A DNA stretch of 64,000 bases from positions 1 through 64,000 of the IMG/VR virus record IMGVR_UViG_3300042308_001511; one strand, given 5' to 3'. Each line of letters starts with the position of its first letter. Positions within the stretch are counted from its first letter, which is position 1. The position numbers and the translations under genes are program-made. Shown here one piece after another: positions 15,462 through 51,517 of this stretch. Under the pieces are notes generated by a model that was not told the DNA's origin, did not search any database, and saw only the letters and a program-made list of their open reading frames with translations.

Positions 15462-16028
15462 ATGGCAAACAACTTACAACTACCAAAAGAAAGACAAATC
15501 TATTTCACAAAACAAGTAGATCAGTCATCAATCGCCGAACTTACAAGGCAAATTATAGAAATAAATGAAGATGATAGACACTTAGAGAAACTCTATGCAG
15601 TTTATGATCTTGAGTATAAACCAAAACCAATCAAAGTCTATATTGATTCATATGGTGGTGCTGTATACCAATGCTTCGGTTTATTATCAGTGATTGAAAG
15701 AAGTCAAACTCCTGTTCATACAATTGTAACTGGTTGTGCAATGAGTTGTGGTTTCCTTATATTACTCGCAGGACATAAGAGGTTTGCTCACAAAATGTCA
15801 ACTCCATTATACCATCAAGTTTCCACAGGATTCTTTGGTAAAGTACAGGATATGGAAGAGAAATTAGAAGAAGCCAAAAGATTACAGACACAGATTGAGG
15901 ATTACACTAAATCCAGAACCAAAATTGCTAAGAAGAAACTCAGAGAAATACTTGAAAACAAAAAAGATTGGTATATGAGTGCCGATGAAGCGTTGGAACT
16001 TGGTGTAGTTGATGAAATATTAGACTAA
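15462..16028 (+). CDS. clpP: ClpP-family serine protease
   Basis: YIDSYGG, CAMSCG (catalytic Ser), YHQ (His), KDWYMSADEALELGVVD. Confidence 0.9.
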   Translation: MANNLQLPKERQIYFTKQVDQSSIAELTRQIIEINEDDRHLEKLYAVYDLEYKPKPIKVYIDSYGGAVYQCFGLLSVIERSQTPVHTIVTGCAMSCGFLILLAGHKRFAHKMSTPLYHQVSTGFFGKVQDMEEKLEEAKRLQTQIEDYTKSRTKIAKKKLREILENKKDWYMSADEALELGVVDEILD

Positions 16029-48563: not shown

Positions 48564-48577
48564 ACCGTTATATATTA

Positions 48578-48603
48578 AAAAGAAAACGGGACTTTCGTCC
48601 CGT
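48578..48603 (-). terminator. Terminator of the Ro60 gene
   Basis: acgggac-gaaa-gtcccgt followed by TTTCTTTTT on the minus strand. Confidence 0.75.
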
Positions 48604-48607
48604 CTCT

Positions 48608-50050
48608 CTAAAGCTCGATTGCTTTGATCTCGTTGACAAGTGCGTTCCTGTCTGTCTTCAACAACTCCATAACATCAAAGACTTTTTCTGAGAATCCTGC
48701 CAAACAATATACCTGATTCTCCGGAAATTGCATTGTTGAATATCCTGCTAAATCCCAAGAGAACACGTGTGGGTTAGCACCAGTTTTCTTTTTCCACTCG
48801 TTGAACTGCTTGGTAGGTGTGTCGTAACCAATCCAACCTTGCATATCACTCAAAATTATGATATTATCATAGGACTTCTTCGCAGTTTTGAAGATGGAAG
48901 GGAAGTTTGTACCACCTCCGCTGAACCTGAACGAGTTTCTAATTGACATCACTGAGTCGAGTGGATTATAACTCATATAACGAGCAGACTCCGCGAAAGT
49001 CATTACATCACACGAGTTTACTTTTGCCAAAACCGCACCGAAAAGGCTAGCAATTTCAGATGGTTTACCCATCATAGATCCAGAAACGTCCATAACAACA
49101 AGACAGTTGTCTAGTTTAGGTACGTTCACAACGGATACCTCGAGTGCCTGGTTGATTGCCACGAGTACGTCCCTTACCTCCTTAGATCCACCAAGTCTCG
49201 AAATCTCGTCGTAAGCTGTTGCGAACCTAAATGGAAGTACCTTACTCTTAGAAATCAGTCTCGCATCAACTAACATCTCACATGCCGCAGTAACCGTATC
49301 TGGTGCTTGTTGGATAATGTTTCTGAGGTTTCTAAGAAGTGCGAAATATCCAATCTTCCTGGTTGATACAAGTTCTGCCCAGGCATCAGACTTCAACTGT
49401 TCGAGTTCCTCCGCATTTCCAGCAACCTGACCTGCCGCCGAAAGTTTTGCTTCCCATGTGTCGGTACTCTTCAACTTATCAGTGATAAGTAAAGAAAGTG
49501 CCTCTTTGTTCCTATCAGTAGGAATTGGATGCACGATGTTCACAACATCGACCAATTTGAAGTCTCTGTTCGACATTTTGTACTTTGCAATCTGGTAGTC
49601 ATCGAACTTGTCGAATGCAGCAGCGAACCCCTTTTTGATGGAGTTAGGAAACTTCACCTTACCTTTCCCGTTTTTAGAAAGGTAGTATGATAGGATCTCT
49701 GTCATATCGTCCGGTCTGGAAACAACCTTCTCATAGAAGGATTTACCCCACTCAGCACCAGAAACCAAAGGTGCAATTTCACCTGCCAATGCATGTGTAA
49801 TTGATCTCATTCCGAACCTATCTCTTGCATAAATCGCAGCTTTAGCCGCGAATACAGGATCGACTTTCGAAAGAAGTGACTTCACCTCGGACAATGTATC
49901 CGATGAACCACGATAGAACTGGTCACTAACGAACGACGTTAGTAATACAGAAGCGAGAGCTAACTCGTCTGATTGTTTGTAAGCCTTACCACCAGCTAGG
50001 TTTTCAGTAAGTGTTTTCGCCTTAGGCGACTTTGTGTTGAACTTTGCCAT
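48608..50050 (-). CDS. rsr: Ro60/TROVE-domain RNA-binding protein (Rsr-like) with C-terminal vWA domain
   Basis: NLAGGKAY, TWEAKLS, YFALLRNLRN, VLPFRF, vWA MIDAS DVSGSM, GGTNF, ILSDMQ, GFSEKVF; true start MAKFN at 50050. Confidence 0.92.
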   Translation of the reverse strand: MAKFNTKSPKAKTLTENLAGGKAYKQSDELALASVLLTSFVSDQFYRGSSDTLSEVKSLLSKVDPVFAAKAAIYARDRFGMRSITHALAGEIAPLVSGAEWGKSFYEKVVSRPDDMTEILSYYLSKNGKGKVKFPNSIKKGFAAAFDKFDDYQIAKYKMSNRDFKLVDVVNIVHPIPTDRNKEALSLLITDKLKSTDTWEAKLSAAGQVAGNAEELEQLKSDAWAELVSTRKIGYFALLRNLRNIIQQAPDTVTAACEMLVDARLISKSKVLPFRFATAYDEISRLGGSKEVRDVLVAINQALEVSVVNVPKLDNCLVVMDVSGSMMGKPSEIASLFGAVLAKVNSCDVMTFAESARYMSYNPLDSVMSIRNSFRFSGGGTNFPSIFKTAKKSYDNIIILSDMQGWIGYDTPTKQFNEWKKKTGANPHVFSWDLAGYSTMQFPENQVYCLAGFSEKVFDVMELLKTDRNALVNEIKAIEL

Positions 50051-50072
50051 ATATCTTATAAAAATTAGTATC

Positions 50073-50105
50073 AAAAAAAAGACCGATGTACATGTACATC
50101 GGTCT
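50073..50105 (-). terminator. Perfect 26-bp palindrome plus U-tract between the ncRNAs and the Ro ORF
   Basis: agaccgatgtacatgtacatcggtct (50080-50105) followed by a T-run on the minus strand. Confidence 0.85.
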
Positions 50106-50114
50106 AATAGGAAT

Positions 50115-50369
50115 GCAGACAAGAAAATTTAGCCTAAGCGATACAGAGAATTCTCCCGAAACTCTGCCGGTCATTAAGGTTTGACCTACCTGCCTTTCTT
50201 TTATCGGAAACAAGGCTTTTCCTATGAGCTTATCGTCCTCCAGACGGGCATTTTCACTAGTCCCGCGGTTCCTTTGACCCGGGCATTCGTGGCTTTGCTG
50301 CCGCTAAGCGTTTTCTCTTTATAGTTTAGAATTGTCTTACGAAGTATCTTAAACTATAGCTATGTCTGC
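50115..50369 (-). ncRNA. Long Y-RNA-like ncRNA (~255 nt) with a pseudoknotted internal domain
   Basis: Ends pair (GCAGACA/UGUCUGC; UAGUUUAAG/CUUAGGCUA); shares the UAG...UACUUCG...UxCU architecture with the neighbouring element; GC-rich hairpins inside; lies directly upstream of Ro60. Confidence 0.7.
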
Positions 50370-50380
50370 GTTCAATATCG

Positions 50381-50454
50381 ACCGAGTAAGTCGAGATAGG
50401 GTGTGTGTCAAATTATTTCAGAAAATCGAAGTAACCCTTTTCTCTCACTACGGC
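50381..50454 (-). ncRNA. Short Y-RNA-like ncRNA (~74 nt)
   Basis: GCCG-UAGU-GAGAGAAAAGGGU-UACUUCG...ACCCUAUCUC-GACUUACU-CGGU: terminal stem, internal loop and second stem, as in bacterial Ro-binding RNAs. Confidence 0.7.
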
Positions 50455-50496
50455 TATTGTCTTAGTTATTGTTATATATCCTCTTTTTTACTTTGT

Positions 50497-50805
50497 TTAA
50501 GAGTTTTGAGGATTTTTTATAGTTTTTATTTCAATTTTGTAAAAGGTACCTTTGCTTTTGTTTTTAGTAGTAGTCTCGTGACAGATTCTCTTTCTCACTG
50601 ACTCACCCTTCAATTTCAGTATTGTTATAGCCTTCTCAATCGACTCTTTGTCGTTGGTTGCGGTTTTTGTAGTTAGTTTGCCCCATCTGTAAGTAGGGAA
50701 TGATGGTTTTATAACGACCTTCATCTCTTGCTCTGATCTCGGTATTGCTTCCCAGATTTCTTGCGAGGTCATCGTTCTCCATACATACTTTACCTTTTCT
50801 TTCAT
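50497..50805 (-). CDS. Basic hypothetical protein (early, host-type promoter)
   Basis: Start MKEKVKY at 50805; TATATTTG at 50813-50820. Confidence 0.6.
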   Translation of the reverse strand: MKEKVKYVWRTMTSQEIWEAIPRSEQEMKVVIKPSFPTYRWGKLTTKTATNDKESIEKAITILKLKGESVRKRICHETTTKNKSKGTFYKIEIKTIKNPQNS

Positions 50806-50812
50806 CGTTCTA

Positions 50813-50840
50813 CAAATATAATAAAAAAAAGAGTGCCAAA
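50813..50840 (-). promoter_or_regulatory. Bacteroidota-type promoter (TTTG ... TATATTTG)
   Basis: TTTG at 50840-50837 and TAnnTTTG at 50820-50813 on the minus strand. Confidence 0.6.
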
Positions 50841-50869
50841 CGACACTCTTCATATATTTTTATGAATAT

Positions 50870-51517
50870 TTATTCGACGTTCTGTGGAACATCCACTTGT
50901 GCGTCTTTGAAACGGTACGTTATGTCAGTACGCTTTCTCCTGTTTTCCGGATCGTACTCAAAGACCTTTATATGTGGATACTTTTTCAAGTATTCCGAAA
51001 TTTTACTCTCTATCTCTAAAGCACGGTTTCTATTTGAATTTGACCGCTCTAGGTTTATTGACATTATATACCTACCGAGGTTTGGTATGTCCTGAAAGAT
51101 ACGTTCCTCGAACTCTGTCTCCAACACTGGATCAGTTGGTAGGTCAAGTCCGTGTTTTGTTCCTCTTTTCCCTGATTTCACTTCGTCGAAGTTGGACTTC
51201 GAGAAATTCCTGGTTTTATCCTGCTTAATGGCTGAACCAAGCTCGTCCGCTGGATAAGGTCTTATACCAGCACGCATAAGCTTGTCTGCATCCAACTCGA
51301 TAATCTCTGATATACCAGCACCGTCGTGTGAGAAGTCTATGTTCCTCGTAACTGATATGGACTTATTCTTTCCGTGTGTTACTCTGGTTGGCTTACCACA
51401 CCTCAAAAGGTCGCTATCCAGTATGGCAACGAACCTGGTGGTCAGGTGGTATAGAGGCTGTCTTGATCCTTCGAGATAAGACTCCTCGATAAACTCTACG
51501 AATGTTTGTATTTTCAT
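50870..51517 (-). CDS. Putative ADP-ribosyltransferase-fold virion protein with CTS
   Basis: MKIQTFVEFIEE; LYHLT, ISVTRN, EFEERI triad; TAATATATA at 51522-51530. Confidence 0.55.
   Translation of the reverse strand: MKIQTFVEFIEESYLEGSRQPLYHLTTRFVAILDSDLLRCGKPTRVTHGKNKSISVTRNIDFSHDGAGISEIIELDADKLMRAGIRPYPADELGSAIKQDKTRNFSKSNFDEVKSGKRGTKHGLDLPTDPVLETEFEERIFQDIPNLGRYIMSINLERSNSNRNRALEIESKISEYLKKYPHIKVFEYDPENRRKRTDITYRFKDAQVDVPQNVE

What the first reader, a model, noticed from the sequence alone, without database searches (positions are those of the whole stretch)
50050..50369. Possible autoregulatory attenuation: mutually exclusive pairing in the Y RNA plus a terminator in front of the Ro ORF
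Seen: the 5' strand UAUAGUUUAAG of element 2 can pair either locally with CUAAACUAUA (hairpin at about 50320-50358) or distally with CUUAGGCUA (about 50129-50137) to close the long stem. A perfect 26-bp palindrome with a U-tract (50073-50105) sits between the RNAs and the Ro ATG, and no TAATATATA or TAnnTTTG motif is seen in the ~22 nt before the start. Inference: Ro is made only by read-through, giving excess RNA over protein and possibly Ro-dependent feedback.
Basis: partly seen in the sequence, partly recalled or inferred. Interest (0 to 1): 0.6.

Follow-up and report, generated by a model that had tools for sequence, protein, structure and literature searches.

The report
Y-RNA terminator upstream of phage Ro

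Summary
Everything lies on the minus strand. The 11-nt strand at 50358-50348 has exactly two 9-bp partners, a local one (50329-50320) and a distal one (50138-50130). A 12-bp hairpin plus U8 (50105-50073) sits 22 nt before the Ro ATG (50050).

In 31 related phage loci the distal pairing and the closing stem show real covariation: 93.5% of cells paired, 8 compensatory pairs, 0/500 shuffles. They are the native fold of a ~255-nt Y-like RNA, m2. The local hairpin has only weak support and is probably a folding intermediate.

The terminator is present in 31/31 relatives. Ro lacks the genome's promoter motifs in register.

A different competition is conserved. The 3' strand of the first Y module (m1, 50385-50380) complements the terminator's 5' arm (50104-50099). 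This holds for at least 6 bp in 28/31 relatives, and recurs with different sequences in two other phage clades. That gives a trp-like 1:2 / 2:3 / 3:4 layout.

Control by Ro, and its direction, are inferred. Metatranscriptome contigs cover the Y RNAs and Ro separately and never bridge the terminator. One Ro contig ends in adapter sequence near the ATG, so an independent start is not excluded.

The parts
50471..50480 (-). Promoter-like core (GATATATAAC) for the Y-RNA transcript. A conserved hairpin at 50513-50478 abuts it.
   Evidence: The ATATATA-type motif is strongly enriched upstream of genes in this genome. This copy is conserved upstream of m1 in L013, L001 and L044. No transcription start was mapped.
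50373..50459 (-). m1, a simple Y-RNA-like hairpin module. Its lower stem is GCCG / bulged U / AGUGAG, paired with CUUACU / CGG(U). It carries the apical UACUUCG motif (50433-50427).
   Evidence: The same module recurs about 15 times in the first 7 loci and in almost all of 80 Ro loci. Its 5' motif UAG(C/U)GA resembles the published GNCGAA / CGAA Ro-binding motif (PMC4201824, PMC12135203). RNA contigs cover it.
50380..50385 (-). A' (UCGGUC), the 3' strand of the m1 lower stem. It can pair with the m1 5' strand (50454-50451) or with the terminator's 5' arm.
   Evidence: At least 6 consecutive pairs with B in 28/31 relatives.
50370..50379 (-). Spacer 1 (m1 to m2). It is complementary to spacer 2.
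   Evidence: Native spacer pairs sum to -93.1 kcal/mol against -61.0 +/- 7.5 for swapped partners, 0/5000 permutations. The pairing is weak in the window itself (-0.2 kcal/mol).
50115..50369 (-). m2, a 255-nt Y-like RNA. It is a module whose upper-stem 3' strand is displaced by an insert of about 170 nt. Closing stem I is 50369-50364 with 50120-50115.
   Evidence: Alignment A2 of 31 relatives. Stem I has 6 of 6 pairs with compensatory changes. No Rfam family matches. RNA contigs lie at 50120-50453 in four runs.
50348..50358 (-). The 5' strand with two alternative partners (UAUAGUUUAAG).
50320..50329 (-). Local partner, forming a hairpin around UACUUCG.
   Evidence: It is present in the minimum-free-energy fold. 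Its register is not supported by covariation: 76.6% paired, 377/500 shuffles reach the observed value. The z-score against shuffled downstream sequence is -1.4 in the window and averages -0.84. An AACUAU island is conserved in roughly 20 of the 31 relatives by eye in A2.
50130..50138 (-). Distal partner, which closes the upper stem (stem II) of m2.
   Evidence: Together with stem I: 93.5% of cells paired, 8 pairs with changes on both sides, 0/500 shuffles, and slid controls at 14-53%.
50105..50114 (-). Spacer 2 (m2 to terminator).
50073..50105 (-). Intrinsic terminator: stem 50105-50080, U-run 50080-50073. The 5'-arm foot B (GACCGA) is 50104-50099. The 3'-arm foot B' is 50086-50081.
   Evidence: It is conserved in place in 31/31 relatives. 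The foot sequence is conserved and the upper stem and loop vary freely.
50051..50072 (-). 22-nt A/U-rich spacer with no Shine-Dalgarno sequence and no in-register promoter motif.
48608..50050 (-). Ro60 (TROVE + vWA) gene, 480 aa.
   Evidence: Pfam TROVE 1.3e-17 and vWA_Ro60 6.3e-5. PDB 9L5Y/9KOP 6e-25 and 2NVO 3e-6.

Best explanation
The 446-nt gap is one transcription unit. It runs promoter-like core, then m1 (a simple Y-RNA hairpin), then m2 (a 255-nt elaborated Y RNA), then a strong intrinsic terminator.

Inferred: the local hairpin is a transient or minor conformer. It forms first because its partner is transcribed about 190 nt earlier than the distal one.

The terminator gives abundant Y RNA. 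Most polymerases stop there. Ro is probably translated from the fraction that reads through, or from processed read-through RNA. Both are inferred.

The place where read-through can be tuned is a four-segment competition, not the m2 pairing:
- A:A' is the m1 lower stem, the presumed Ro-binding helix.
- A':B is the m1 3' strand paired with the terminator's 5' arm. It is reached by zipping the m2 closing stem outward through spacer 1 and spacer 2.
- B:B' is the terminator.

If Ro clamps A:A', then A' cannot hold B, the terminator forms, and less Ro mRNA is made. That is negative feedback.

The layout is observed. The effector and the sign of regulation are inferred.
For: 1. The distal stem and stem I covary. 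The G-U pairs in them fit only the minus strand.
2. The terminator is present in 31/31 relatives. Its foot sequence is conserved although the upper stem and loop vary freely.
3. A' and B complement each other over at least 6 consecutive pairs in 28/31 relatives. All four segments change together in the window and L013 (CCG/CGG) and in L037 (UCAG/CUGA).
4. Native spacer 1: spacer 2 duplexes beat swapped partners in 5000/5000 permutations.
5. When the transcript is folded up to B but without B', B pairs with A' in 30/31 sequences. The gain is -6.2 kcal/mol on average and -3.7 in the window. With B' added, the terminator wins in 28/31.
6. The same geometry recurs with unrelated sequences in a second clade (L043, L045, L046, L049, L050, L042) and a third (L075). 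In each the terminator's 5' arm pairs with the 3' strand of a simple module's lower stem. In the two second-clade loci read in full (L043, L046) exactly one module is enclosed between them.
7. Other modules in the same loci have different stem I sequences, so the match is specific to one module and not a general Ro sequence preference.
8. Ro has no in-register promoter motif. Clades without a terminator put Ro directly behind the last module.
Against: - There is no direct evidence of read-through. No RNA contig bridges the terminator in four runs. One Ro contig from a 95%-identical relative ends at 50036 in adapter sequence, which is compatible with a transcription start or a processing site near the ATG.
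- At full length the terminator state is about 10 kcal/mol more stable than the A':B state in the window (-110.7 against -100.3). The loop-proximal half of the terminator stem is free to nucleate. The antiterminator may therefore be displaced too easily to matter unless something stabilises it.
- A':B is weakened in L062, L039, L028 and L050. Several terminator-bearing lineages (L060, L058, L051, L068) show no such pairing.
- The likeness of A'/B' and of A/B could partly reflect descent of the terminator from a duplicated module.
- Ro binding to the m1 lower stem is inferred from motif resemblance only.
- The sequences are related, so the permutation and shuffle figures overstate independence.
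Confidence: 0.4

Rival explanations
1. The terminator is constitutive and leaky, and there is no regulation. It only defines the Y-RNA 3' end and fixes a high ratio of Y RNA to Ro mRNA. The likeness between the m1 lower stem and the terminator foot is a relic of module duplication or of concerted evolution. The local hairpin of m2 is a harmless folding intermediate.
For: The terminator is strong, canonical and conserved. About 10 other genes of this genome have the same layout of terminator, short spacer and ATG without a promoter motif. Third-clade terminators look like truncated modules. The terminator state is thermodynamically dominant at full length.
Against: It does not explain three things. 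First, the foot of the terminator is conserved in sequence while the rest of the stem drifts. Second, A, A', B and B' change together in two lineages. Third, three clades with different sequences each keep the terminator arm complementary to one particular module and not to the others. The repeats are only 7-10 nt long, too short for efficient gene conversion; this last point rests on general knowledge.
Confidence: 0.3
2. Ro has its own weak or non-canonical start in or next to the 22-nt spacer, giving a leaderless or short-leader mRNA. The terminator then simply insulates Ro from the very strong Y-RNA promoter.
For: The Ro-sense contig in run X4 (1413 nt) ends at 50036 directly followed by Illumina adapter, and a read-length record in X2 ends at 50035. 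No contig crosses 50037-50115. This genome uses a motif placed exactly 4 nt before many ATGs, which implies leaderless or near-leaderless mRNAs. Weak -10-like strings (TAATTT, TATAAG) exist in the spacer.
Against: No promoter motif is in the right register, and the near-matches are not conserved even in the 93%-identical relative. Spacers across the clade share no motif beyond being A-rich. Contigs cannot show RNA starts, and holes in contig cover prove nothing (tool caveats). A processed read-through RNA would give the same end.
Confidence: 0.2
3. One reading: switching of the m2 5' strand between its local and distal partners decides whether the terminator forms, and Ro shifts that balance.
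For: Both pairings exist and exclude each other. They are within a few kcal/mol of each other in most relatives. The 5' strand overlaps the Ro-motif region of m2, so Ro could favour the distal form; this is inference.
Against: Neither partner overlaps or abuts the terminator. Stem I and the terminator fold the same way in both states. The local register shows no covariation above shuffles and little excess stability.
Confidence: 0.05

Closest known systems
Bacterial and phage Ro60 (Rsr) loci with adjacent Y RNAs: YrlA/YrlB, D. radiodurans Yrn1/Yrn2, Thermus phage phiLo Yrl1/Yrl2
   Same: One or more Y RNAs lie on the same strand next to the Ro gene, here just upstream. There is a simple long-hairpin Y RNA plus a more elaborate one. 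A motif of the CGA(A/U) type sits on the 5' strand near a bulged lower stem. In M. smegmatis and D. radiodurans the Y RNAs are made as polycistronic precursors upstream of rsr (PMC4201824). In phiLo two Yrl RNAs lie upstream of Ro60 (PMC12135203). The protein resembles phiLo Ro60.
   Different: The elaborate RNA in this clade (m2) carries a conserved domain of about 170 nt with no tRNA-like arms. More distant clades of the same phage family do carry YrlA-like T and D arms. All modules share a UACUUCG apical motif that is not described for YrlA. No Rfam model detects them. No terminator-based control of Ro is mentioned in the papers I could read.
Classical transcription attenuators with terminator, antiterminator and anti-antiterminator: the trp leader 1:2/2:3/3:4, and PyrR and T-box leaders (from general knowledge)
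   Same: There are four segments. The second can pair with the first or the third, and the third with the second or the fourth. The fourth is followed by a U-run. As in T-box leaders, the terminator is more stable than the antiterminator.
   Different: A whole 255-nt structured RNA sits between segments 2 and 3, and the antiterminator is reached by extending that RNA's closing stem. The leader is itself the abundant functional product. The presumed effector is the protein encoded downstream, bound to its natural RNA partner rather than to a mimic. None of this is tested.
Autogenous control of ribosomal-protein operons by binding to mRNA leaders (from general knowledge)
   Same: An RNA-binding protein would sense the excess of itself over its RNA partner and reduce its own synthesis.
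   Different: Here the sensor would be the true partner RNA in cis, acting on termination. There is no experimental support.
Co-transcriptional rearrangement of a 5' hairpin into a long-range helix, as described for E. coli SRP RNA (recalled from memory, not checked in the paper library)
   Same: A local hairpin forms from the 5' strand and must be displaced when the distal partner is made.
   Different: In the window, nearest-neighbour energies do not favour the distal form: -68.0 forced against -73.2 for the minimum-free-energy fold. The final state may therefore need protein or tertiary contacts.

Membership tests
Ro60 / TROVE protein | TROVE (HEAT-repeat ring) domain followed by a vWA domain | tested here: met
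   Pfam TROVE 1.3e-17 (64.6 bits against a cutoff of 23). vWA_Ro60 6.3e-5, which is 23.4 bits and just under its 27.7 cutoff. Full-length match to phiLo Ro60 9L5Y/9KOP at 6e-25 and to Rsr 2NVO at 3e-6.
Y RNA (bacterial or phage, YrlA-like) | Encoded within a few kb of Ro60 on the same strand | tested here: met
   m1 and m2 lie 65-410 nt upstream of the Ro ATG on the same strand. The same holds in most of the 80 Ro loci.
Y RNA (bacterial or phage, YrlA-like) | Long stem formed by the 5' and 3' ends, with a bulge or internal loop | tested here: met
   m2: stem I and stem II with covariation. m1: lower stem with a bulged U in the predicted fold.
Y RNA (bacterial or phage, YrlA-like) | GNCGAA(N)G / CGAA motif near the 5' end | tested here: inconclusive
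   Modules carry UAGCGA(U/A) or UAGUGA. Window m1 has UAGUGAG and window m2 has UAGCUAU. These resemble the published motif but are not identical to it.
Y RNA (bacterial or phage, YrlA-like) | tRNA-like domain (T arm, D arm, acceptor-like stem) in at least one Y RNA | tested here: not met
   ARAGORN finds nothing in the window and Rfam gives no tRNA hit. No T-loop or D-loop sequence is visible in m2. The domain is present in more distant clades of the same phage family.
Y RNA (bacterial or phage, YrlA-like) | Bound by Ro60 | not testable with these tools
   Needs co-immunoprecipitation or a gel-shift assay.
Intrinsic (Rho-independent) terminator | G+C-rich hairpin directly followed by a U-run, on the transcribed strand | tested here: met
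   11-12 bp stem, 4-nt loop, U8. Conserved in 31/31 relatives with compensatory changes in the upper stem.
Intrinsic (Rho-independent) terminator | RNA 3' ends at the U-run in vivo | tested here: inconclusive
   RNA contigs of m2 stop at 50116-50125 and none covers the hairpin. Contigs cannot show ends.
Transcription attenuator (terminator / antiterminator / anti-antiterminator) | A segment that can pair either with the terminator's 5' arm or with an upstream segment | tested here: met
   A' (50385-50380) pairs with A (50454-50451) or with B (50104-50099). At least 6 bp in 28/31 relatives. It recurs in two further clades.
Transcription attenuator (terminator / antiterminator / anti-antiterminator) | Read-through responds to an effector and to mutations in the alternative helices | not testable with these tools
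   Needs in vitro transcription or reporter assays.
   The distal helix covaries. The local helix does not, in its register. Neither overlaps the terminator.

The most novel reading that the evidence does not exclude
A Y RNA acts as the cis-acting sensor of an attenuator that sets synthesis of its own partner protein. Ro60 bound to the lower stem of the first Y module decides whether that stem's 3' strand is free to capture the terminator's 5' arm. Capture would occur through an outward-zipping helix that encloses a second, 255-nt Y RNA. Ro would then titrate itself against its Y RNAs during transcription. The design would be conserved in at least three clades of large freshwater phages.
Probability: 0.25. 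Interest if true: 0.8.

Novelty: new variant of a known kind. Interest (0 to 1): 0.6.

Why it matters
How Ro60 and Y RNA levels are kept in proportion is not described for any organism in the literature I could reach. Y RNAs are known to depend on Ro for stability, but no feedback on Ro synthesis is reported.

A leader that is both the abundant functional RNA and the sensor for its protein partner would be a new use of the attenuator principle. It is directly testable with a short template: promoter to Ro codon 10, about 450 nt.

The work also shows that large uncultivated freshwater phages carry a big, diverse family of Y-RNA arrays that Rfam does not detect. One member is a 255-nt RNA found in metatranscriptomes from 24 studies. 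This widens the known range of Y RNAs and gives many natural sequence variants for testing Ro binding.

Tried and rejected
- Rfam, at gathering and permissive thresholds, on the window and on six related loci. It gave no Y-RNA family, only chance hits and tRNA.
- ARAGORN on the window. It found nothing.
- RNAalifold on the MAFFT alignment of m2. It recovered only stem I because the middle of the alignment is too gappy. I tested named structures instead.
- Exact DNA-pattern scan of viral contigs. Two of the four hits were chance matches in coding DNA, L010 and L012.
- Nearest-neighbour energies cannot decide between the local and distal forms. The differences are within a few kcal/mol. The rows for the L027 group are unreliable because of a one-base misalignment.
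- A pseudoknot reading, in which the AACUAU island pairs with the first AUAG copy beside stem I. I considered it and set it aside. Where the sequences vary (window, L013, L027, L037) the second-copy, nested register fits better.
- The idea that the terminator foot resembles m1 because Ro prefers that sequence. Rejected, because other modules of the same loci have unrelated stem I sequences.
- Reading expression level from contig depth. The tool warns against it, so I treat it only as a hint.
- The review PMC10870794 is not held in the library.
Full report
**Setting.** The window belongs to a 344-kb virus record rated 91% complete. All features of the finding lie on the minus strand. The ORF 50050-48608 is a Ro60 homologue. 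It matches Pfam TROVE at 1.3e-17 and Ro60 vWA at 6.3e-5. It matches the Thermus phage phiLo Ro60 structures 9L5Y/9KOP at 6e-25 and D. radiodurans Rsr at 3e-6. The previous ORF ends at 50497, which leaves a 446-nt gap. The nearest database records are uncultured phages of 630-640 kb. Enriched TAnnTTTG motifs suggest a Bacteroidota-type host; this is an inference.

**Checking the observation.** The 11-mer at 50358-50348 has exactly two sites in the gap with 9 or more consecutive complementary bases. One is at 50329-50320 and the other at 50138-50130. Shuffles give P(>=2 sites) = 0.054. So the single sequence is suggestive and no more. The terminator has its stem at 50105-50080 and its U-run to 50073. 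The spacer to the ATG is 22 nt. AATATATA occurs 59 times against 3.1 expected upstream of 453 crude ORFs, and TATATTTG 26 times against 2.7. TAATATATA sits exactly 4 nt before the ATG in about 19 genes, with a second cluster at 20-24 nt. Ro has only out-of-register near-matches, and these are not kept in its 93%-identical relative.

**What the RNAs are.**
- A profile of six Ro proteins retrieved 80 phage loci. Most of them have several hundred noncoding bases upstream of Ro.
- These gaps hold arrays of a repeated module. In order, the module has a lower stem, a UAG(C/U)GA motif, an upper stem, an apical UACUUCG with an A-rich 3' partner, the upper-stem 3' strand, a U-rich motif (AAUUUUCU-like), and the lower-stem 3' strand.
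- In more distant clades many modules carry a permuted tRNA-like domain with T arm, acceptor-like stem and D arm. This is the hallmark of YrlA-type bacterial Y RNAs (PMC4201824).
- The 5' motif resembles the published GNCGAA / CGAA Ro-binding motif (PMC4201824, PMC12135203).
- Rfam detects none of these modules.
- In the window's own clade there are 31 distinct sequences with Ro identity of 63-93%. The layout is always the same: m1 (a simple module, window 50459-50373), m2 (window 50369-50115, 214-293 nt across the clade), then a terminator.

**The two pairings of m2.** I aligned the 31 m2 elements (A2) and tested each pairing.
Eight pairs show changes on both sides. No shuffle out of 500 reaches the observed values, and slid controls give 14-53%. 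RNAalifold independently recovers stem I with 6 compensatory pairs. Several pairs are G-U, which fixes the strand.
- By comparison with simple modules, m2 is a module whose upper-stem 3' strand has been moved about 170 nt downstream by an inserted, conserved, non-tRNA-like domain. The distal helix is therefore the native fold.
- The local hairpin, counted in the window's register, is paired in 76.6% of cells but shows no covariation (377/500 shuffles reach it).
- Folding the first 70 nt or so against shuffled downstream sequence gives a mean z of -0.84. The window scores -1.4. Strong values occur only in L027/L031 (about -3.4), L037 (-3.0) and L033 (-2.6).
- An AACUAU island is nevertheless conserved inside an otherwise variable stretch. 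The base pair at its foot varies by lineage: U-A in the window, C-G in L013 and L027, G-C in L037.
- Nearest-neighbour energies cannot choose between the forms. In the window the distal form is 5 kcal/mol above the minimum-free-energy fold.
- My reading is that the local hairpin is a kinetic intermediate or a minor conformer of m2. It may be relevant to Ro binding on m2. It shares no bases with the terminator, and stem I and the terminator fold identically in both states.

**The terminator and Ro expression.**
- The terminator is present in 31/31 clade members. The spacer to the ATG is usually 24-55 nt, A/U-rich, and has no Shine-Dalgarno sequence. It is longer in L037, L039 and L044.
- More distant clades have no terminator and place an AGGAG-type ribosome-binding site directly behind the last module. 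Twenty-two loci have such a site. Co-transcription of Y RNAs and Ro is therefore probably ancestral. It is also the known situation in M. smegmatis and D. radiodurans (PMC4201824).
- In this genome 18 of the 29 genes with a terminator-like site within 110 nt upstream lack both promoter motifs. About 10 of them have a spacer of 25 nt or less. So Ro's layout is not unusual here.

**RNA evidence.**
- Twenty-four freshwater or river metatranscriptome runs from 24 studies hold part of 48600-50900. Most hold a share about the size of the ncRNA region.
- I laid contigs from four runs. They cover 50120-50453 (m2 and m1) and, separately, parts of the Ro ORF.
- None bridges 50037-50115.
- m2 contigs end at 50116-50125.
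- In three runs the m2 contigs are much deeper than the Ro contigs, for example 1675 against 42. The tool warns that contig depth cannot rank genes.
- The 1413-nt Ro contig of run X4, from a 95%-identical relative, ends at 50036 followed directly by Illumina adapter. This suggests a discrete 5' end close to the ATG. It could be a transcription start or a processing site. I cannot tell which, and contigs are weak evidence for ends.

**A different, conserved competition.**
- The foot of the terminator stem is conserved in sequence across the clade while its upper part and loop drift.
- The terminator's 3' arm foot is nearly identical to the 3' strand of the m1 lower stem. Its 5' arm foot resembles the m1 5' strand.
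- The m1 3' strand therefore complements the terminator's 5' arm. The run is 7 consecutive pairs in 25 sequences, 6 in the window and L013, and 9 in L037. L028, L039 and L062 are weaker.
- All four segments changed together in the window/L013 lineage and, separately, in L037.
- The spacers on either side of m2 are also complementary. Native pairs sum to -93.1 kcal/mol against -61.0 +/- 7.5 for swapped partners, 0/5000 permutations. The signal is strong in L015, L016, L018, L025, L033 and L037 and weak in the window itself.
- The m2 closing stem can thus zip outward through the spacers into the helix between the m1 3' strand and the terminator arm.
- Folding transcripts that end just before the terminator's 3' arm gives that helix in 30/31 sequences. 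The mean gain is -6.2 kcal/mol, and -3.7 in the window. With the 3' arm present the terminator wins in 28/31.
- The same geometry recurs with unrelated sequences in a second clade (L043, L045, L046, L049, L050, L042: 9-11 nt, 77-149 nt upstream). In the two of these loci that I read in full, L043 and L046, exactly one module lies between the two pairing segments. It also recurs in a third clade (L075, with partial matches in L077 and L061) and possibly in L082 and L086. It is not seen in L060, L058, L051 or L068.
- Other modules in these loci have unrelated lower stems. A general Ro sequence preference therefore does not explain the match.

**Mechanism proposed.** The four segments behave like regions 1-4 of a classical attenuator, with a whole Y RNA inserted between regions 2 and 3.
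- Shown here: the complementarity, its conservation, and the thermodynamic order of events.
- Inferred: that it changes read-through; that Ro binds the m1 lower stem (by analogy with the bulged, motif-bearing Ro site of known Y RNAs); and that Ro binding favours termination.
- Caveat: the full-length terminator state is about 10 kcal/mol more stable than the alternative in the window, and the loop-proximal half of the terminator can nucleate freely. The antiterminator may therefore need stabilising. The sign of any Ro effect could even be the opposite.

**Comparison with what is known.** Ro genes with upstream Y RNAs are known in bacteria and phages (PMC4201824, PMC12135203), and jumbo phages are known to carry TROVE genes (PMC7824862, listed). 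I found no report of terminator-based or autogenous control of Ro.

**Verdict.** The finding is a new variant of known kinds: a Y-RNA/Ro operon combined with an attenuator-like leader.

Noticed in passing
whole genome G000; examples in the window at 48564-48582 and 50806-50830 (minus strand): The motif TAATATATA lies exactly 4 nt before the ATG of about 19 genes, with a second cluster at 20-24 nt. This implies many leaderless or near-leaderless mRNAs. TAnnTTTG is also enriched upstream of genes, which suggests two promoter classes.
   Followed up: partly
window 50115-50369 (minus strand): m2 is a conserved structured RNA of about 255 nt with no Rfam family. Its insert of about 170 nt contains a hairpin (about 50156-50134) with a conserved GNRA-type loop region and compensatory stem changes. 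Part of the locus is held in metatranscriptomes from 24 freshwater or river studies.
   Followed up: partly
L011 7556-7640 (same contig as L044): One relative has an extra G+C-rich, hairpin-forming element of about 80 nt between the Y-RNA terminator and the Ro start. It is absent from all other clade members and could be a small inserted element or a further ncRNA.
   Followed up: no
L042 1019-1093; L005 2876-2942: One Y-RNA array contains a sequence that scores as a full tRNA (Rfam 54.6 bits). In another, a module's internal domain scores as tRNA (52.5 bits), including an anticodon-like arm. This differs from the permuted YrlA arrangement seen in L003 and L043.
   Followed up: no
window 50478-50513 (minus strand): A conserved hairpin (AUCCUC ... 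GAGGAU) spans the stop codon of the upstream ORF and abuts the promoter-like core of the Y-RNA unit. It is also present in L001 and L044 with a longer stem. It has no U-run, so it is not a terminator.
   Followed up: no
G000, for example ORFs 15462-16028(+), 71314-72048(-), 95981-96694(+), 195856-196275(+), 250221-250808(-): About ten other genes have a terminator-like hairpin followed within 25 nt by the start codon, with no recognisable promoter motif. Leaky terminators inside operons, or an unrecognised promoter class, may be common in this phage.
   Followed up: partly
window 50116-50125 and 50435: RNA contigs of m2 end at the foot of stem I in three runs rather than at the U-run. One contig ends in adapter sequence at 50435, inside m1. 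These may be processed ends or assembly breaks at hairpins.
   Followed up: no
L077 and L075 terminators (last 90 nt or so before the Ro ATG): In a third clade the terminator hairpin itself looks like a truncated Y module. Its 5' arm resembles the lower stem plus the UAGCGA-like motif, and its 3' arm contains the AAUUUUCU-like motif. This raises the possibility that Ro binds the terminator hairpin directly.
   Followed up: no
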